Part shown: positions 18,763 through 38,455 of the stretch, in pieces
Layout of the letters: the number at the start of each line of letters is the position of its first letter
Position numbering within the stretch: position 1 is the first letter of the stretch
NCBI RefSeq assembly: GCF_964188315.1
Contig: NC_135664.1
Coordinates: forward strand, 43,772,001-43,836,000
Reading direction: 5' to 3'
DNA: 64,000 bases
Source: Podarcis muralis
Lineage: Eukaryota
Position numbers and translations under genes: made by a program
The notes under the pieces: model-generated
What the model was told of the DNA's origin: nothing
The model's input: only the letters and a program-made list of their open reading frames with translations
Database searches by the model: none

Positions 18763-21700
18763 ATGGGGCGAAGATCCACGTCATCCACCAAGAGTGGGAA
18801 GTTCATGAATCCCACAGATCAAGCTCGTAAGTGTACAGAATTTAATTTTTAAAAGTAAGGGGGAGGGTTTTAGGAGAGACATATAGTTGAAAGCATGTAG
18901 CACAGTGTTAAAAACTAAGATAGGAAAGCTAGGAGCCAAATTGCACCTTAAACCTAGGTTACGGGCACAACAACGATAGTCTAGGCACTTTTTTAAAAAT
19001 AACGAATACAAAACTGAAAATGAATAAACCGCTGCTAAAATATTATGTTCATTTTTTACATGGTCTAGTCCTTCCCCTGCCCCTCCAAATATTCTTAAGA
19101 GGGTCTCTTCTCCAGTCTTCAGAGAGTAGCTGGAAGTGGGGAGGCAGAAAAAGGCCCTCCTTTCCTTCCACTCTGCAGTTTTAATCTGAAATCTTAGGTG
19201 CAGTACTGTGCCCAGAGTTCAGAAACTGCTCACACTAATTAAATTCCCCTTTGCAAAATGTACCTGTAACAATGGGAGTTTCGAACACTAATGTAGCCTG
19301 AGGTATAAGACTTAACACTGCGGGCTAAAAATGTTACAGTATACTATGGGTTTAGCATTAAACAATGTCAGTGAAGGAATGTACAGGAATATAAAATAAC
19401 GGGATGGTGGTAATATCAAGTGGAGATTTTTCTTCAGAACATTGCTTTACATTAAGTTAATCAGTTGAAGGCATAATGTTACTGCTTTATAAATCTCATA
19501 TACAAATATTTATATTAAATTATTTAAAGAGCAGTCAGTATGACTTGGTTCACTGCAGCCTGTTAATTATAGGATTTCTCGTAGTTAAATCTAAGTGCAC
19601 TTCTGTGCAGCTTCAAGTCGGTCCATGTTTACTATGGCTATGTACACACTATAACGTCAAAGCACCTTTGAAGCACAGTCTTTTCCTCAAAGAATTTTGA
19701 GTACTGTAGTTTATTAAGGGTCCCTGGGAATTATAGCTATGTGTGGTGTAAGCTGCAGTGCTCTGAGTTTTTTGAGGGAAAGAATTTCCTTCAAATGTGC
19801 TTTAAAGGTATAGAGTGTACACAGGCTGTGTTTGCAAGAGTCAGATTCCTTTTGGATGGTAGAACACTCAACTTCTTTTCCTTAAAGACAGTTTTGGAAA
19901 AAGGTAGAGTAAGTGTTCTGGGTTGGTCAGGCAACGTTGTGTGTGCTTTTATGAAGTATACAAGTAAAGCCTTATAGACTTAGATTCCAGATTTCTTATA
20001 GACTTAGACCCAGATTTTCTTTCCGGCTGTTGTTTGTTGTGAACAAGCAGCATTCTGGTGCATGTTGCCCAGTTCCTGCTTTGCTCCTTCCCTGGCACAA
20101 GTACAGTACCTCTCAGGATTCAAAGTGTACTCTGAAGTACAATGAGTTCCATGATAAGTGTGGTTATGATTGCAGCCCAAAGCTTGCTGGTACTGGGTCT
20201 GAAATTGAGCATTTATATCTTTGCAGGCAAGGAGGCTCGAAAAAGGGAGCTTAAGAAGGTGAGAGATCGTTGCTTTACTAAAGGCTGGTGACCCTGTACT
20301 TCTACGTGTTATGTTCCTAACGTAAAGTGTACCTTGTTAATGTAGTACTTGCTAACTGATGAGCCGTTTCCTATTTAAAAATACAGTATTTTCCAAGTAT
20401 TCATAAAGCTGGAGAAATAATGCATTTTTAATAGAATTGTGATAGTACTAATGTTATATATTTATAGTTCACCTTGGTGGATGATTAGACTTATTCTCAT
20501 CTGTAAATATAAATATCATGGCAGTGTTTGACCAAGTACTCAAGTGTCTTTAAACAGGAAGCCAGTAATATAAAACCCCACAGAACTAGAGACTGAGGAT
20601 TGTAAAGGTTGATAGGGTATAAATGTGAAGGTATGTTAACACACTGCCTTTAAAATTGGAATGTAAAATCAATTTTAACAGCTTAGAACAGTGTTGTGCA
20701 GACTTTAGTCTTGTGGGATCTGCTTTTTTTAAAAACTAGAAACTTACTATCCTCCAAGTAGAGCCAGGTGCAAGATATGTTATAGTGGGGGCAACAGACT
20801 CTTAAAATTAAGGATCAGGGTGCCTCTAAGCACATGTTTGGCCCATAATTGTTTCCCCAGTCCCAGAACTGAGCTCACAGTCCTGTCATGCAAAAACCCA
20901 CTCCTGGCTCCCCCTATTATTTTTTTTTGTATTGTATATGTTGCTTGGTTTGGCCGATACAGGAATCTTTCACTCTCTCTCATTTTCTGGTGAGTCCAGA
21001 ACAAGAAGCAACGCATGATGGTGAGAGCAGCAGTGTTGAAGATGAAGGATCCCAAGCAAATAATCCGAGATATGGAAAAACTTGATGAAATGGGTAGGTT
21101 TGAATAAACCTTTTGGGGGGTTGGGGGAAACTTGAATGGAGAAACCAGATGGGGCCAAATGCATCTGTGAAGCTGAAAGACTTAGGGGTAGGCAATATAG
21201 TACTCTCTATATGTTATACTAAAACTCTCATTGTCCCTGACCACTGGTCATGTTGGCTTATGGGAGTTAATAGTTTAAAAATATCTGGAGGAGGAACACA
21301 TTGGCTGATGTAACAAATGTTATCAGATACCATGGGTGTTTTTTTTTTTTTGGAGTAAGGAGATCAAGGGCTGGGTACACTCAAGTGGCCAGTTTCTGTA
21401 GAGAGTTGGTAGCTCCCTGCTCCCCACCCCTGTGTTCTTTTTCTTTCTCTCTTTTAGAAGCCATCCTATAAACATTGATGGGACCAGGCACGCAGCTCTA
21501 GAAAGAGGGTTCATTGAATGGGGAGGCCTTCTCCCCCCTCCCTAGTCACTACTTGGGTTTTTGATCAGGCTGGGGCACCTGGGAACTAACAGAGTTATTT
21601 GAGCACCAGTAAGCTGTCTTCCCAAATATGTATTCTCTTTTAGTGGCACTCAGGAGGAAAGCTTTCTTCGGGGTTCTGTTTCTGAACATGGATGCCACAA

Positions 21701-24700
21701 TGGCACATGTGTTATAAACGTGGTGTGATGAGAGGAAGAGAAAACAATGACTTAATTCAGGCTTTGCTTGTAAATCTCTCTCCTTCCACATGGTTGTCTC
21801 AATCATAATACTGGATCAGAGTTTAACCCAGTGCAGCAACCCCAGCTCAATGAGAAGGTGCTGAAGGACAAGCGTAAGAAATTGCGTGAGACCTTTGAGC
21901 GTATCCTGCGGCTCTATGAGAAGGAGAATCCAGACATCTACAAGGAGTTGCGCAAGCTAGAAGTGGAATATGAGCAGAAGAGATCTCAGCTCAGTCAGTA
22001 CTTCGATGCTGTAAAGGTATTTGCCCTCATCAGATTTGAATGACATTGATTTAAGGGTTCTTACTCTTGGCTTACTTAAGTGTGGACAGTGCAAGGCCAG
22101 TTGCTTGGTTCCTTTTAAGCCCTACTGCGCTTTTAAAAAAATTAGAAGCACACCATGCATATGTTTGGTAACAAACAGAACATGCAAGCAGTGGTGTGTT
22201 GTATTTGAAATTCATCTACATAGAAACTGGCTTTTCTGAATTTCCTCCCTATGTAGTTTGGTGACCAGAAACCTTCACTTTTCCCTCCTCGGATTTCATT
22301 GGAATGGTTTGAATGACTATTTCATTAATTTGACTGGTCGTGTGATGTTCCTTCTAAATGGTTGCTTGCATTTATGAATTGTCAGGAAACTAAATGTTAT
22401 GCCACTGATTGCTTCATGTTGCTTTCTCGTTTATAAAGCACCTAAAATTTGCTAAGTGCTGTGCAACCCCACCCCCAAATTATTCCTGCCTGCAGGCTTA
22501 CAATCAACTAGACATGGCTCAGAAGGGAAGTGAAAGCCCTCTTGGCTGATTATTAAAGCTAGCAGTTGTTTTTTTTATTTAAATGTGGTTTTCATTTATG
22601 CTAACTGCTTACAGTCTAAGTCAGTGTTTCCCAACCTTTTTTGGGCAAAGGCACACTTGTTTGATGAAAAAAATCTTGAGGCACACCACCATTACAGCCC
22701 CGTGACGTCAGCGCGCAGCGTCACGCCGGGAGGGAAGGGCGCCGGGGCGCTGCTGCTGCCGCCGCCGCCGCTCCCGGCAGGCATGGGCCCAGCTGAGGTG
22801 GCGGCGGCTGTTGTGGTGGTGGCGGCGATAGCGGGCGGAGGAGGGGGCGGCGGCGGGGCCGAGGTGGCCGGCGGCAGCGGGGGAGGCGGCAGCGGGTGGA
22901 GCAGGAGGGCGGCCGAGGCCGGTGAGGGAGTAGGGTTGCCCGGGGCTTGAGGAACCGTCGCCGGGAGTTGCTGCTGCTGTTGTTGCTGCTGCTGCCCGGA
23001 CATGCCGGCCTCCTCCTCGTCCGCTGTCTCGCGCTCCTCCCTTTTGCGCGCGCTGCCCCGCCGCCGCCCCATTGGCCGGGTCCTGTCAGCTGATCCTGTG
23101 TTATTTCCTGTGTGTGTGTGTGAGGGGAGAATGGAGAGAGAAACCTCGGCACCACCACCGCGGAGCCGCCCCCGGCTCGACGCGGATCCTCGCCGCCGCC
23201 GCCCCGCCTCTCGCCGCCCGACTCGCCCGCCTCCCTCCCACGGCACACCAGGCAACGTCTCGCGGCACACTAGTGTGCCGCGGAACACCGGTTGGGAAAC
23301 ACTGGTCTAAGTGACATAATTCAAAAGAAATGGGGAAGGGAGAGGTAGATAAGTAGGTTCCAGGGCTAAGTCTTTCATGAGGTTATATCAGGCATAGGCA
23401 AACCCGGCCCTGCAGATGTTTTGGGACTACAACTCCCATCATCTCTAGCTAACAGGACCAGTGGTCAGGGATGATGGGAGCTGTAGTCTCAAACATCTGC
23501 AGGGCCGAGTTTGCCTATGCCTGGGTTATACGATCAAGATACATAATGAGCAAGGGAGGAGAGGATCCAAGCGTCGGGTGCTCCTGGTTGAGCTGATGGA
23601 GGGGCGCTTGTCTTGCCTCTCTGTCACATACCCATTGTCACCTCCTGAAGATTAACCTAAGCGAATGTTTACAAATCTCTTTCAGAATGCTCAGCATGTC
23701 GAAGTGGAGAGTATTCCCCTGCCAGATATGCCTCATGCCCCTTCCAACATCCTCATTCAGGACATCCCCCTGCCTGGAGCGCAGCCCCCCTCTATTCTCA
23801 AAAAGACATCAGCCTATGGGTAAGCAAGGAAATGCACTGGGAAAGGCCAAAGCTCTTTTTGGGGTTGGTCTGTGTGGATTAGAATCTGATGCTGCTACTC
23901 TGATTAAATAGGCTTTTGTTGTTATTTTACTTGTGCTTTTAGAGCTTTTAAAAGCCACATGCTATAATTTGTGAGCTGCTTTTTGTTCGTGCGGTTTAAT
24001 GGTGGTTCTTGAAGTGTAGCTTAAAGCACAAGACATGGACTGACATCATTTGGGCTGCATGCTAGTACAGAAAAGTGTTAAGCGTGGCTGTCGATTAAAT
24101 CTGGGGCACATGCATATATTGAATTGCATTGGTGCTCAGCTTCTTGTCCTTGCTGTCAGCTGTTTTGTTGCCGGCTGAGAAGAAATACTAACTTCAGCCA
24201 CTAGGGAGACAGTTGGCATAATATTCACAGGGCATAAATAAGTAGCCAGAAACTAGGGCAAAAGCTCAGCTGGTGCTACATTGGCATCCAGCACTCTAGC
24301 TCAAACTGAACATCTTGTAAATCCTTAGCTCTTAAACTGTTCAAAACCTTGTTTCTAGACCTCCTGTCCGGCCTGTTTCTGTACTTCCACCTCCCGGGCT
24401 TGGTGTTCCTCGCTTACCTCCAGGCAGGAAGCCTCCAGGACCTCCACCAGGGCCGCCTCCACCTCAGGTCTTGCAGATGTACGGTCGGAAGGTTGGATTC
24501 ACCTCAGAGATGGCCCCTCGGAGAAGAGAAGAGGAGGTGTCTTACAGTCCAGAGACAGGTAGTCATTTTCCTCATCCGCAAGTGCTACCTTTGAAGGTGA
24601 CCTGGAAACTACAGCTAATCCAGAATGCGGTAGCTAGACTGGTGACTGGGAGTGGCTGCCAAGACCACATAACACCAGTCTTGAAAGACCTATGTTGGCT

Positions 24701-34972: not shown

Positions 34973-35632
34973 ATGTCCGAAACGGCGCCCGCGGTTGCTG
35001 TCAGCGCTGCTGCTCCTGTCGTGGCCTCCAAGGCTCCGGCCAAGAAGGCGAAGAAGGCTAGTGGCGGCGCCAAAGCGCGCAAGGCTTCGGGCCCCAGCGT
35101 CACCGAGCTGATCACCAAGGCGGTGGCGGCGTCCAAGGAGCGCAAAGGGGTGTCTCTGGCGGCGCTGAAGAAGTCCCTGGCGGCCGGAGGCTACGACGTG
35201 GAGAAGAACAACAGCCGCATCAAGCTGGGCCTGAAGAGCCTGGTGAACAAAGGCACCCTGGTGCACACCAAGGGCATCGGCGCCTCGGGATCCTTCAAGA
35301 TCGGCAAGAAGGCCGGCGAGGGCAAGGAGAAGGCGCCCAAGAAGAAGGCGGCTGCCGTCAAAGCCAAGAAGCCCGCCGCCAAGAAAGCCGCGGCCGGCGG
35401 CGTCAAGAAGCCCAAGAAAGCCGCGGCGGCCAAGAAAAGCCCTAAGAAGCCCAAGAAGCCGGCGGCCAAGAAGGCGGCCAAGAGCCCCAAGAAAGCGGCC
35501 AAGCCCGTCAAGCCCAAGAGGGTCGCCAAGAGCCCGGCCAAAGCCAAGGCGGTGAAGCCCAAGACGGCCAAGCCGAAGGCAGCCAAACCCAAAGCGGCCA
35601 AGGCTAAGAAGGCGGCGCCCAAGAAGAAGTAG
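34973..35632 (+). CDS. H1: Linker histone H1, 219 aa
   Basis: MSETAPAV..., globular domain [12 protein letters not shown]...[13 protein letters not shown], Lys/Ala/Pro tail with SPKK motifs. True ATG at 34973 (ORF track extends to a GTG). Confidence 0.98.
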
Positions 35633-35664
35633 ACGTGCCCCGCGCGCTGCTAAAAAACCCCAAC

Positions 35665-35680
35665 GGCTCTTTTAAGAGCC
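35665..35680 (+). other. Histone mRNA 3' stem-loop (H1)
   Basis: GGCTCTTTTAAGAGCC followed by ACCCA. Confidence 0.97.
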
Positions 35681-36679
35681 ACCCACCTCCTCCTAAAAAG
35701 AGCTTGTCACAAATGTACATACACTCTTGCAATATATAGATACATACACATACACACGCCTGCCACAGTATATCTTGCACATGTTTGGTCAGAATTTCAG
35801 TCACAGACTTGCTCCTCGCAGAATTATTAGCCTGCATTTCTGGAAATGGGGACATTAGATCGGCCTCTTTAGCGGGATACTAACTTGCCCCGGGTTGGTT
35901 GGTGCGCGCTTCTTGAGAAGAGTGGATCTAGTTAGGCGGGCACGGAAGTGAAAGAAGAGGAGGGAGATGCTTTCATCCCAGAAAAGTTATTAATTTCTAA
36001 AAAGTTATTTTTAAAAACTTGAACTTTGAGCCCTTGAATAAAATCAGCTAGAAAGTATTGTTGCGAAAAGATGGGGGAGAAGCCGCGCTACTTGACTATC
36101 CAACTTACAGGTGGTGGGGTTTTTTTGGGGGGGGTGTATTTGTGTGAATGAATCCCTCTTCGGTGAGAATTTTTACAAATTTTATGCATTGTTAGGAGCA
36201 CACGGTGTCGCTAGTAGGATTTATTTCTGCGCCAAAATACATAGAACTGGGTTTCGGTTTTCATGAAAGTAAGTCCCATTTAAACATAAAGCAGTTTAAT
36301 TCTGAGTCAATATGTTTAGGACTCGGATTTACAAAGTATTAAAACAGCCCGAAGCTTGTGGGAAACCGCTGTCAAACACTAAGATACATTGTACCACGTG
36401 TCCAGGGTTAGATTGTCTCGGTTGTCAAAATTTGCTGGCTAGTTCTTAAAGGGTCCTACGGTTCACGGCAATTAAATACTAGATGGAGCACCTTCACACT
36501 GTCAAACAATGCCAGCTTCTGCTCAGCCCCATTGAATTCGGTGTATTTACTTTAAAGAATTTAAGACAATTTAGAAGGGGGCGATTTTCAAACTTTTAAA
36601 ATAGTTTTTTGTGAATGAACGATCGCTTATGCCAGGTCGAACGGCAGGTCTTTCATTTTCCCGTCAAAGTCGGTGTGAG

Positions 36680-36863: not shown

Positions 36864-37280
<417 letters not shown>

Positions 37281-37306
37281 ATTACCGCCACTCACTGCAA
37301 CCTAAC

Positions 37307-37322
37307 GGCTCTTTTAAGAGCC
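37307..37322 (+). other. Histone mRNA 3' stem-loop (H2B)
   Basis: GGCTCTTTTAAGAGCC. Confidence 0.97.
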
Positions 37323-38455
37323 ACCTATTTTTTCATTAAGAGAGCTCTACGACACTTCTACCCCCTACTAAAAGTTTAATGCAGTTTAGTAACCTGCAGT
37401 TTTATAAGAGTATATATTTAAAGTAGATGAATAGATGAGCAAATTAAGTTAATTTGGATATGCAGAAGATATTACAGTTAAGTTTAAGGAGCCGCAGAAA
37501 GGGGAAGGAAGTTTTGAAATGTTTAAAAAATTGTGAAGTTGGTGAAATGTATAAATCTGAAAAGCATAAATATATATATATTTAAAAAGTTTAATGCAGT
37601 TTAAATATAAGCCATCTCGCCCACTATATGCAGCAGTTAAAAGCTAAATGATCGAACAAAGCACAGATACCCTAGAGCTCCTTTCATATGAGTCTCCTGC
37701 GGTGAATAAATTTTACTTCTTTTGTGTCCCAGATGAAATCGTAGTTTTATATGCACAGAAAGAATGACTGATGGTTGTAGAAAACCGAATTGGGAAGCAA
37801 TTTTCTAGCAATAACAGTTGGGTAATTTGAATTACCCGCGCTTTGCAGTTATTGGTGAGCTGTAGCCAGCTCCTATATACGGTTTGTAGACGTGCGGTTG
37901 CACAACAAAAGTGGCCAACGCTTCGAAGTTCCTAATGATTAGTATCCATGCAGTCTCCAATTTATTGTTTTAGAATTCACTTATTACATGTTCGTGAAAT
38001 GGGTAGGATTACTGGAATTGCAGAATACCTTCGGAAAATTCGGTCCCGAATGAGGATATCTTATTACATAAACAGGGTTACATATAGGCGATGTGGGTTT
38101 TGTGAGGCAGCTCGATAAACATGGACGCGTATTTTCTATTTTTAAGAAAATTAAAAGGGTGATTTCTGTGAACGATACACTACACGACCCTTAGGTTTAC
38201 ACGTAGCTGGCATTCCTCCGCCCCTGGAGCCTACGCAATGCAAAAACGGAGGGGGAAATTTAAAAAGCGAGAGGCTGCTGACGATTTTTAAACATCAATG
38301 CGCGCCTTTTCAAACTGTCGAATGAGCTTGAGGTTTTGTAATTCCAACCAATCAACAAGTCGAATGTATCCAATGGCGAGAGTTGTTCATCTAGCAATAG
38401 CCAATCAGAGGGCAGAACTAGTGTATAAATTTTGCCTTCTGCGCTCAGCTTTTAG

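What the first reader, a model, noticed from the sequence alone, without database searches (positions are those of the whole stretch)
22622..23304. hAT transposon that appears to have captured the promoter and first coding exon of RANBP9 (Pack-TIR), inserted in a WBP11 intron
Seen: 683 bp bounded by perfect 15-bp TIRs and a perfect 8-bp TSD (GTCTAAGT). The interior is very CpG-rich, unlike the AT-rich intron, and the minus strand has an ATG at 23003 opening a 103-aa frame. That frame has four anchors in the same order as the recalled RANBP9 N-terminus (MSGQ+polyQ; AALLLHP; PPATSAPPPP; GSSSAPAPFPPG). It then switches to transposon subterminal sequence just before the conserved DSALNEQE/SPRY region. 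Established: RANBP9 lies at an unrelated locus (human chr6); gene capture by TIR transposons is well known in plants (Pack-MULEs) and reported less often in animals. Inference: a young transduplication by a lizard hAT family.
Basis: partly seen in the sequence, partly recalled or inferred. Interest (0 to 1): 0.9.

Follow-up and report, generated by a model that had tools for sequence, protein, structure and literature searches.

The report
hAT transposon carrying RANBP9 gene start
This is a recently inserted copy of a small cut-and-paste (hAT) jumping gene whose middle is a stolen piece of the start of the lizard's RANBP9 gene; it belongs to a family with roughly a thousand or more copies, which is very unusual for gene-carrying DNA transposons in backboned animals.

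Summary
A 683-bp element (22622-23304) has perfect 15-bp terminal inverted repeats and a perfect 8-bp target-site duplication. Its 541-bp interior is like a CpG island (GC 0.75, CpG o/e 0.91). It lies in a WBP11 intron, antisense to WBP11.

The minus-strand ORF is a real RANBP9 N-terminus, codons 1-93. It aligns colinearly with a squamate exon-1 product that matches human RANBP9 in the PDB (E 1e-41). The score is 22 sd above composition-preserving shuffles.

- Only about two thirds of coding exon 1 is present.
- A promoter origin for the 224-bp leader is not shown.
- This is not a one-off young capture. By contig depth the cargo occurs at roughly 10^3 or more copy-equivalents in all four coded organisms, on a still more abundant hAT backbone.

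The insertion itself is young. Precise empty sites occur in three other organisms and in one run labelled as the best holder's organism.

RNA shows no transcription leaving this copy. The open frame is what GC-rich DNA gives by chance.

The most likely reading is a neutral, polymorphic Pack-hAT insertion.

The scan found this family before on other DNA of this genome, and those follow-ups reached the same reading.

The parts
22614..22621 (.). Left copy of the 8-bp target-site duplication, GTCTAAGT
   Evidence: family D16. The empty-site contigs hold a single copy (joint 22613->23305, 'both' = 8).
22622..22636 (+). Left terminal inverted repeat, CAGTGTTTCCCAACC
   Evidence: (I10, 100% complementary).
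22622..22694 (.). Left hAT backbone end (AT-rich, no CpG), with GGCACAC motifs at 22650 and 22680
   Evidence: RNA and DNA reads from other family members match up to 22694. They then run on into a common AT-rich sequence: 85-117 reads per RNA run at agreement 0.97-0.98, and also.
22695..22723 (-). 29-bp filler of unassigned origin, holding a TGACGTCA (CRE-like) palindrome. It supplies the last 10 codons of the ORF
   Evidence: It is neither backbone (loose end at 22694) nor alignable to RANBP9 (the alignment breaks at about 22724). It has no similarity to L001.
22724..23011 (-). RANBP9-derived segment: about 8 nt of leader plus codons 1-93 of the first coding exon
   Evidence: blastn and MAFFT against the squamate RANBP9 exon-1 contig L001. 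tblastn of P0001 residues 4-89 gives 74% identity, E 9e-39 without composition correction. The shuffle test gives z = 22. P0001 is RANBP9 by the PDB search.
22692..23003 (-). 103-codon chimeric ORF plus stop: RANBP9 residues 1-93, then 10 filler residues, with the stop at the edge of the hAT left end
   Evidence: There is no Pfam domain. Other frames on both strands are open for 102-198 codons as well, so an open frame is expected from the GC content.
23012..23235 (-). GC-rich leader or promoter-like cargo of unproven origin, with a CCAAT box and GC boxes about 60-80 nt 5' of the ATG. It includes the 82-bp variable segment 23064-23144 and a breakpoint at 23187 that is shared with other cargos
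   Evidence: CpG o/e 1.06. Joint 23063->23145 appears in all runs. Loose ends at 23187 carry different GC-rich continuations. RNA lies equally on both strands here. There is no alignment to the region upstream of L001 beyond GCC repeats.
23236..23304 (.). Right hAT backbone end, with GGCACAC motifs at 23242, 23264 and 23273(-)
   Evidence: Contigs of organism D join an AT-rich canonical interior at 23236. Short deletion forms join 22644 to 23239/23241.
23290..23304 (-). Right terminal inverted repeat
23305..23312 (.). Right copy of the target-site duplication, GTCTAAGT
21820..22016 (+). WBP11 coding exon upstream of the insertion (EFNPVQQ...DAVK), with AG acceptor and GT donor
   Evidence: Stranded RNA reads cover it in one direction only.
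23686..23819 (+). WBP11 coding exon downstream of the insertion (NAQHVEVES...SAYG)

Best explanation
This is one copy of a non-autonomous hAT transposon of the Pack-TIR type ('Pack-hAT'). It has about 70 bp of hAT backbone at each end: the 15-bp inverted repeats plus clustered GGCACAC subterminal motifs, which are probably the sites bound by a transposase supplied in trans.

Between the ends, the transposase gene is replaced by 541 bp of CpG-island-like host DNA. The core of that cargo is the first 93 codons of RANBP9 with its start codon.

Inferred history:
1. An ancestor of these lacertid lizards acquired RANBP9 5' DNA inside a hAT element. The likely route is template switching or gap repair, as proposed for other Pack-TIRs.
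2. The loaded element kept its ends and was mobilised many times, reaching roughly 10^3 or more copy-equivalents.
3. One copy was pasted recently into the WBP11 intron 22017-23685, antisense to WBP11, duplicating GTCTAAGT.

The copy is probably selectively neutral. Its 103-codon ORF lacks every RANBP9 domain, and it is open because GC-rich DNA has few stop codons. No transcription leaving this copy was seen.

Shown here: element anatomy, RANBP9 identity of the coding part, multi-copy status, empty sites, and host-gene context.

Inferred, not shown: the capture mechanism, the trans-acting transposase, the promoter origin of the leader, and neutrality.
For: Anatomy:
- Perfect TIRs and TSD.
- 5 of the 6 GGCACAC sites in the 64-kb window lie within 70 bp of the element's ends.

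Backbone/cargo borders:
- Reads of other family members leave this copy at 22694 and at about 23236-23241 and run into a shared AT-rich interior.
- Short forms join 22644 to 23239/23241.

RANBP9 identity:
- P0001, encoded on contig L001, matches human RANBP9 chain 7nsc_A at E 1.1e-41, against 4e-22 for RANBP10. The match includes the N-terminal AALLLHPPPP stretch.
- The window ORF aligns with P0001 from Met1 to ...APAPFP. The score of 332 compares with 91 +/- 11 for 1000 shuffles.
- DNA is alignable from 23011 to about 22724 and then diverges where L001 encodes [11 protein letters not shown].
- The Podarcis muralis model P0003 shares SAGPMPAGSGGG-SSSAPAPFP and continues into the SPRY start.

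Family size:
- Summed contig depth over the RANBP9 part is 1e4-1e6, against 20-120 on the unique flanks, in five DNA runs from four coded organisms.
- 27-49 distinct contigs per run cover single positions of the RANBP9 part.
- At least 15 distinct P. muralis UniProt models carry RANBP9 exon-1 pieces. Four of them run into the translated TIR (G-WETL), each followed by a different residue.

Youth of this insertion:
- Precise empty-site contigs occur in organisms B, C and D (4-8% flank divergence).
- One also occurs in run X3, labelled organism A, with 1 difference in 188 flank bases next to the site.

Context:
- WBP11 exons lie on the + strand.
- The SPRY part of RANBP9 is found nowhere in the window.
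Against: - No same-genome RANBP9 locus could be reached. Parent-copy identity, the 5' border of the capture and the promoter origin of 23012-23235 are therefore untested.
- Standard composition-corrected searches see nothing: phmmer of the ORF against the PDB and tblastn with composition statistics. The identification rests on a colinear alignment and a shuffle test.
- The tool warns that summed contig depth is not a copy number, and GC-rich repeats can attract unrelated contigs.
- No contig of an independent run was shown to bridge the filled junction.
- No autonomous partner element was seen.
- Neutrality is only an absence of evidence. It is not known whether the two RNA samples carry this insertion.
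Confidence: 0.86

Rival explanations
1. The captured CpG island is a working module. Inside WBP11 it acts as an antisense promoter or as a methylation or regulatory element, or the 103-codon polyQ/Pro peptide is made. The copy, or the family, would then have a host function or a regulatory effect on WBP11 or RANBP9.
For: - CpG o/e is 0.91 with 68 CpG, so there is little CpG decay.
- A CCAAT box and GC boxes lie 60-80 nt 5' of the ATG, and a CRE-like palindrome lies at 22705-22712.
- RNA over the RANBP9 part is about 10:1 in the sense direction.
- An earlier first-stage note on this same stretch raised the idea.
Against: - No RNA read lies in the intron flanks on either strand (22025-22574 and 23345-23385 have depth 0 in X23 and X24).
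- The sense-biased reads are better explained by RANBP9 mRNA. The bias ends at the ATG region, and many of these reads carry G at 22916, which the high-copy DNA contigs lack.
- Three of the five positions where this copy departs from the family consensus are CpG-to-TpG/CpA changes, as expected for methylated, silent DNA.
- The ORF has no domain, and several other frames are equally open.
- High CpG content is expected simply because the copy is young.
Confidence: 0.07
2. The resemblance to RANBP9 is only low-complexity similarity (polyQ, polyP, polyA). The interior would be an ordinary GC-rich repeat consensus with no host-gene origin.
For: - phmmer of the ORF against the PDB finds nothing at E <= 10, although full-length human RANBP9 is in it.
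- tblastn with composition statistics finds nothing.
- The whole-library phmmer search gave only two hits.
Against: - The alignment runs colinearly from Met1 to residue 91, with non-repetitive blocks in the same order: LPAT-P-AP-NP-PSPASAALLLHP, ATSAPPPP, SAGPM-AGSG, SSAPAPFP.
- It scores 22 sd above shuffles of the same composition, and 13.8 sd for the P. muralis fragment.
- DNA identity is about 73-80% to a distant squamate's exon 1, starting exactly at the ATG context GGCCGGCATGTCCGGGCAG.
- The best other Pro-rich match in the window is far weaker: 44% identity, E 2e-8, against 74%, E 9e-39.
Confidence: 0.03
3. The filled site is an assembly artefact: a copy of an abundant repeat wrongly placed in the WBP11 intron. 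On this reading the empty allele is the only real one.
For: - Every independent contig that crosses the site is empty (X3, X4, X6, X14).
- No bridging contig of the filled junction was listed for organism A run X1.
Against: - An assembler misplacing a repeat does not create a perfect 8-bp duplication of the target that matches the single copy in the empty alleles.
- Short-read unitigs break at high-copy repeats, so missing bridging contigs are expected.
- This copy has its own private substitutions relative to the family consensus (22677, 22799, 22876, 22891, 22954). That fits a real individual locus rather than a collapsed consensus.
Confidence: 0.03
4. The direction is reversed: the RANBP9 N-terminus of lizards was itself donated by the transposon (exonisation) rather than captured from the gene.
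For: None specific. It is considered because the cargo is far more abundant than the gene.
Against: - The same N-terminal blocks are present in human RANBP9 (the AALLLHPPPPPP...APFPHGDSALNEQ alignment).
- They are also present in other reptile-like exon-1 products (P0004, P0006, P0009).
- The contig L001 carrying P0001 has no similarity to either hAT end (z about 0).
Confidence: 0.01

Closest known systems
Pack-TIRs of animals, especially Pack-hAT (Tan et al. 2021, Nat Commun 12:4280, PMC8277862)
   Same: - TIR-transposon ends and a TSD enclose a fragment of a host gene from another locus, with no transposase.
- hAT is the commonest carrier there (208 of 370).
- 5'UTR or first-exon fragments are typical cargo. 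One example is 291 bp of the CAPSL 5'UTR in frog hAT-N8_XT.
   Different: In that survey of 100 animal genomes only four Pack-TIRs (1.4%) were multicopy, and the example given had three copies. Here the loaded element stands at roughly 10^3 or more copy-equivalents in several species and still produces new insertions. No lizard is mentioned in that paper ('lizard' and 'Anolis' have 0 occurrences).
Pack-MULEs of plants (rice, maize)
   Same: - Gene-fragment capture between transposon ends.
- A bias towards GC-rich 5' ends of genes.
- Chimeric ORFs.
- Some families amplify.
(From established knowledge and the abstract of PMC8277862.)
   Different: The superfamily differs: Mutator, with 9-11-bp TSDs and long TIRs, against hAT here with an 8-bp TSD and 15-bp TIRs. 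The hosts are plants. Individual Pack-MULEs rarely reach thousands of copies.
hAT-derived MITEs (e.g. the Mar family of Drosophila, PMC3517528; Brassica BniHAT, PMC7385995)
   Same: Short, non-coding, high-copy deletion derivatives with hAT TIRs and 8-bp TSDs, mobilised in trans. The roughly 90-bp forms that join 22644 to 23239/23241 are classic MITEs of the same backbone.
   Different: MITE interiors derive from the autonomous element. Here 79% of the element (541 of 683 bp) is foreign, CpG-island-like host DNA.
RANBP9 (RanBPM), scaffold of the CTLH/GID E3 ligase (PDB 7nsc)
   Same: The first 93 residues, including the start codon and the Gln/Pro/Ala-rich N-terminal blocks.
   Different: It lacks the SPRY, LisH, CTLH and CRA domains. 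There is no Pfam hit, and no SPRY-coding DNA in the window. It is not a RANBP9 paralogue.

Membership tests
hAT superfamily (non-autonomous member) | 8-bp target-site duplication | tested here: met
   GTCTAAGT lies on both sides. There is a single copy in the empty alleles of four runs.
hAT superfamily (non-autonomous member) | Short terminal inverted repeats (about 10-25 bp) beginning with CAG/TAG | tested here: met
   The TIRs are 15 bp and perfect, CAGTGTTTCCCAACC. The typical hAT start is taken from established knowledge.
hAT superfamily (non-autonomous member) | Target consensus nTnnnnAn | tested here: inconclusive
   GTCTAAGT has T at position 2 but G at position 7. One site cannot test a preference. 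The flank consensus in the RNA reads (TCCTAGAC, agreement 0.6-0.7) may come from one dominant transcribed copy.
hAT superfamily (non-autonomous member) | An autonomous partner encoding a hAT transposase (BED finger, DDE/RNase-H fold, hAT dimerisation domain) with the same ends | not testable with these tools
hAT superfamily (non-autonomous member) | Repeated subterminal motifs near both ends (transposase-binding sites, as in Ac/Ds) | tested here: met
   GGCACAC occurs at 22650, 22680, 23242, 23264 and 23273(-). That is 5 of the 6 occurrences in 64 kb, while the window-wide count is at chance level. Binding itself is not tested.
Pack-TIR (Pack-hAT) | Interior derived from a host gene, not from the transposon | tested here: met
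   22724-23011 corresponds to RANBP9 codons 1-93. The interior differs from the canonical AT-rich interior that other family members carry after 22694 and before 23236.
Pack-TIR (Pack-hAT) | Parental gene copy identified at another locus of the same genome | not testable with these tools
   The window holds WBP11 and histone genes and no SPRY-coding RANBP9 DNA. The genome's own RANBP9 locus could not be fetched. The nearest proxies are P. muralis gene models and sense-strand RNA reads carrying a variant absent from the repeat contigs.
Pack-TIR (Pack-hAT) | No transposase coding capacity | tested here: met
   The element is 683 bp in total, and no Pfam family was found for the ORF.
Pack-TIR (Pack-hAT) | Evidence of transposition of the loaded element (independent copies with their own TSDs; empty sites) | tested here: met
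   There is a precise empty site at this locus. The cargo is multi-copy. P. muralis models end in the translated TIR followed by different residues. The TSDs of other copies were not read directly.
RANBP9/RANBP10 protein family | SPRY, LisH, CTLH and CRA domains | tested here: not met
   Homology ends at residue 93, before the SPRY domain. There is no Pfam hit. It is a gene fragment, not a family member.

The most novel reading that the evidence does not exclude
This lacertid hAT lineage may be a recurrent, efficient capturer and spreader of CpG-island first exons. RANBP9 is the cargo here. At least three other GC-rich cargos are joined to the same right end at 23187/23222 in my read data, and earlier notes of the scan report PPAT and another CpG-island cargo.

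Its thousand-copy RANBP9 subfamily would then seed portable promoter, CpG-island and ATG modules across genes. Alternatively, through antisense or small RNAs, it could feed back on RANBP9 itself, a gene linked in the literature to germline nuage (PMC2727916, PMC7072634; seen only as search hits).
Probability: 0.15. Interest if true: 0.8.

Novelty: new member of a known kind. Interest (0 to 1): 0.6.

Why it matters
Gene-fragment capture by DNA transposons is thought to be common and amplifying in plants. In animals it is thought to be rare and almost always single-copy: 4 multicopy cases among 370 in 100 genomes (PMC8277862).

A loaded hAT element that reached roughly a thousand or more copies in wall-lizard relatives, and that still makes new, polymorphic insertions inside genes, has three uses:
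- It is a natural system for studying how cargo is acquired and tolerated.
- It can show whether dispersed CpG islands create new promoters or methylation targets.
- It can show whether silencing of the copies spills over to the parent gene.

Practically, it also explains a set of spurious 'RANBP9/RANBP10-like' gene models in Podarcis annotations. It is also a ready presence/absence marker in WBP11.

Tried and rejected
Searches that gave nothing useful:
- phmmer of the 103-aa ORF against PDB sequences: no hit at E <= 10. This is uninformative because of low complexity.
- tblastn with composition statistics: empty. It was rerun without them and backed by a shuffle test.
- phmmer against 1.84 billion representatives: only P0002 and P0003.
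- Word search with the 198-codon open frame: nothing new.
- Look-up of contigs encoding the P. muralis model P0003: not on record. No same-genus genomic DNA of the parent was obtained.
- Leader (23012-23235), filler and both hAT ends against the 1.5 kb upstream of the squamate RANBP9 ATG (L001) and against L002: only GCC-repeat matches. The promoter origin stays open.
- Rfam: nothing in the element.
- Literature: no paper holds the TIR string, and none links hAT, RANBP9 and capture.

Results set aside:
- L002 holds RANBP9 codons 1-50 joined to other GC-rich DNA at a contig end. It is either a variant cargo or a graph chimera, so it was not used as evidence.
- The bacterial-type promoter/terminator scan is irrelevant for a vertebrate.
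- The 82-bp skipped segment 23064-23144 was considered as an intron and rejected. It has no GT..AG on either strand, and the reads lie equally on both strands.

Full report
**1. The observation**

The stretch reads as described. Perfect 15-nt inverted repeats (CAGTGTTTCCCAACC and its complement) lie at 22622-22636 and 23290-23304. They are flanked directly by GTCTAAGT at 22614-21 and 23305-12. The repeat occurs nowhere else in the 64-kb window, even with two mismatches.

GC content jumps from about 0.39 to 0.70-0.81 inside the element. The cargo 22695-23235 has GC 0.75 and CpG o/e 0.91, against 0.18-0.33 in the surrounding intron. On the minus strand an ATG at 23003 opens 103 codons.

Chance does not explain this. 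A 15-nt inverted pair with an adjoining 8-nt direct repeat is expected about 1e-6 times per window. Other genomes also carry the same site without exactly these 691 bases (section 5).

**2. Host context**

WBP11 coding exons lie on the + strand, and all carry recognisable WBP11 peptide:
- the start exon at about 18.76 kb
- exons at about 20.23 kb and 21.0 kb
- 21820-22016
- 23686-23819
- exons from 24.3 kb onwards

The exon at 20994-21104 reaches Pfam Wbp11 above its cut-off (E 1.3e-6). The two exons that flank the element have canonical AG/GT borders.

The element therefore sits in the intron 22017-23685, and its RANBP9 frame is antisense to WBP11. Histone H1 and H2B genes with Rfam histone stem-loops follow downstream.

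**3. Is the interior RANBP9?**

Composition-corrected searches are blind here. phmmer against the PDB found nothing, and tblastn with composition statistics returned nothing.

A word-based search found P0001, a 153-residue product of a 2.2-kb Logan contig (L001). P0001 begins MSGQQ... and continues into ...[37 protein letters not shown]... It matches human RANBP9 (7nsc_A) at E 1.1e-41, against 4e-22 for RANBP10. The match includes the N-terminal AALLLHPPPP block, which only RANBP9 has.

The window ORF aligns with P0001 from Met1 to ...SSAPAPFP with the blocks in the same order. The local score is 332, against 91 +/- 11 (maximum 138) for 1000 shuffles of the ORF, so z = 22. For the Podarcis muralis model P0003, z = 13.8.

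At the DNA level homology starts about 8 nt before the ATG (GGCCGGCATGTCCGGGCAG) and ends at about 22724. There L001 goes on to encode [11 protein letters not shown] and the element does not. Without composition correction, P0001 residues 4-89 hit 22982-22731 at 74% identity and E 9e-39. The best other Pro-rich match in the window, in WBP11 itself, is 44% at E 2e-8. The SPRY-coding part of P0001 hits nothing in the window.

The cargo therefore holds RANBP9 codons 1-93. This is not the whole first coding exon, which runs to ...NNLRVHYKG at about codon 146-150.

The direction is gene to transposon, for two reasons. The N-terminus is shared with human and other reptile-like sequences. L001 has no similarity to the hAT ends.

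**4. Anatomy of the element**

Reads and contigs of related elements show where this copy's cargo begins and ends.
- **Left border.** In two RNA runs, 85-117 reads per run match up to 22694 and then continue, at 0.97-0.98 agreement, into one AT-rich sequence (GAAAATGTTAAAAAATTT...). DNA contigs do the same.
- **Right border.** Contigs join an AT-rich interior at 23236, and short MITE-like forms join 22644 to 23239/23241.

The backbone is thus 22622-22694 and about 23236-23304. Five of the six GGCACAC heptamers in the whole window lie in these two ends. That is the pattern of subterminal transposase-binding repeats in hAT elements, although binding itself is inferred.

Between the ends lie three segments:
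- A 29-bp filler (22695-22723) containing a TGACGTCA palindrome.
- The RANBP9 block (22724-23011).
- A 224-bp GC-rich leader (23012-23235). It has a CCAAT box and GC boxes 60-80 nt 5' of the ATG.

The leader is heterogeneous in the family. An 82-bp segment (23064-23144) is missing from a minor variant. At 23187 and 23222 other elements continue into at least three different GC-rich sequences. I could not show that the leader comes from RANBP9.

**5. One copy of a large family, recently inserted**

Summed contig depth, RANBP9 block against unique flanks:

| Run | Organism | RANBP9 block | Unique flanks |
|---|---|---|---|
| X1 | A | 2.5e4-1.2e5 | 10-27 |
| X3 | A | 1e5-4e5 | 70-124 |
| X4 | B | 1e5-1e6 | 17-140 |
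| X6 | C | 1e5-1e6 | 17-140 |
| X14 | D | 1e5-1e6 | 17-140 |

The hAT ends are about ten times deeper again. The tool warns that summed depth is not a copy number, so I read this only as an order of magnitude of 10^3 or more copy-equivalents.

Two independent signs point the same way:
- 27-49 distinct contigs per run cover single positions of the RANBP9 block.
- At least 15 different P. muralis UniProt gene models contain RANBP9 exon-1 pieces.
  - Four of them end ...HYKG-WETL, where WETL translates the TIR, each followed by a different residue.
  - Others start with a translation of 23220-23180.

Those models also show a subfamily that keeps exon 1 to its last codon. The 683-bp form is therefore probably a deletion derivative (inferred).

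At this locus, contigs from organisms B, C and D and from run X3 (labelled organism A) join 22613 to 23305, with the 8 TSD letters fitting either side.
- The B, C and D flanks differ from the window by 4-8%.
- The X3 flanks differ by 1 base in the 188 next to the site and by about 2% further out.
- The depth of X3's empty contig (70.6) is close to that of its flanks.

The insertion is therefore younger than the split from B, C and D. It is apparently polymorphic, or lineage-specific, within organism A.

This copy departs from the near-fixed family state at 22677, 22799, 22876, 22891 and 22954. Three of these are CpG-to-TpG/CpA changes.

**6. Transcription**

Runs X23 and X24 are stranded: the WBP11 exon is covered only by pairs whose first mate lies on the minus strand.
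- Over the RANBP9 block (22850-22959) reads are 10-30:1 in the opposite orientation, which means minus-strand RNA, sense for RANBP9.
- Over the leader (23015-23179) and the hAT ends both strands are about equal.
- Many sense reads carry G at 22916, which the high-copy DNA contigs lack.

The simplest reading (inferred) is that RANBP9 mRNA supplies the sense excess and that its 5' end lies near the ATG region. Scattered element copies inside other transcripts would supply the rest.

No read lies in the intron flanks of this copy on either strand. There is thus no sign of a transcript starting in the cargo and running out. However, it is unknown whether those two animals carry the insertion.

**7. 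Mechanism and comparison**

The element works like a Pack-TIR. It keeps the cis sequences needed for cut-and-paste by a hAT transposase supplied in trans, and it carries host DNA as a passenger.

It meets the testable hAT criteria: the 8-bp TSD, short CAG-initial TIRs and subterminal repeats. It also meets the Pack-TIR criteria that can be tested: a host-gene interior, no transposase, and evidence of transposition. The autonomous partner and the same-genome parent locus could not be tested.

In the survey of 100 animal genomes by Tan et al. (PMC8277862), 208 of 370 Pack-TIRs were hAT-borne. Only four were multicopy, and the example given had three copies. The kind is known; the scale of amplification is exceptional for a vertebrate. 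No paper in the searchable library describes it.

**8. Relation to earlier notes of this scan**

Several other copies of this family in the same genome were already followed up, with the same reading: a Pack-hAT with the RANBP9 start, hundreds to thousands of copies, and empty sites.
- One note proposes a second captured promoter piece. My breakpoint at 23187 is compatible with that but does not prove it.
- Another note reports a PPAT-carrying relative.

This report adds:
- the WBP11 copy with its empty alleles
- the backbone/cargo borders from read ends
- the stranded RNA picture
- the annotation footprints in P. muralis

**9. Limits**

I could therefore not ask which runs hold the filled junction.

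Noticed in passing
window 23389-23525: A second hAT-type MITE lies in the same WBP11 intron. It is a 137-bp palindrome with TIRs CAGGCATAGGCAAAC / GTTTGCCTATGCCTG, flanked by GGTTATAT / GGTTATAC (an 8-bp TSD with one mismatch). Its summed contig depth is 2e6-1.2e7, far above the RANBP9 element. It is already present at this site in organisms B and C, because their empty-site contigs run on into it.
   Followed up: partly
window 34973-35705 and 36900-37348: Histone H1 and H2B genes on the + strand downstream of WBP11, each followed by an Rfam Histone3 stem-loop at 35660-35705 and 37302-37348.
   Followed up: partly
Podarcis muralis UniProt models P0007, P0008, P0011, P0023, P0044, P0122-P0130: At least 15 short annotated 'uncharacterized' or 'RANBP10' proteins are pieces of RANBP9 exon 1. 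They are fused to translated transposon sequence (G-WETL is the TIR; GGERRGGGGEDPRR is element 23220-23180) or to a shared tail RGTEGGRGRGHRHPQAPSASSSERQAEKLPGKL. They are probably annotation artefacts of this transposon family, and they point to a longer subfamily that keeps exon 1 to its end.
   Followed up: partly
window 23187 and 23222 (read ends): Many reads and contigs share the right end from 23187 or 23222 onward but continue leftward into three different GC-rich sequences. These are other GC-rich cargos on the same hAT end.
   Followed up: no
window 23064-23144: A variant lacking this 82-bp segment makes up about 1-2% of the DNA contig depth but about half of the RNA reads, on both strands equally. 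There are no splice-site dinucleotides. This is unexplained.
   Followed up: partly
L002:1-504: A Logan contig starts 15 nt before the RANBP9 ATG and follows the element for 50 codons (91% identity). It then switches to another CpG-island-like sequence with a GTGAGT donor. It is either another cargo variant or an assembly chimera.
   Followed up: partly
   Followed up: no
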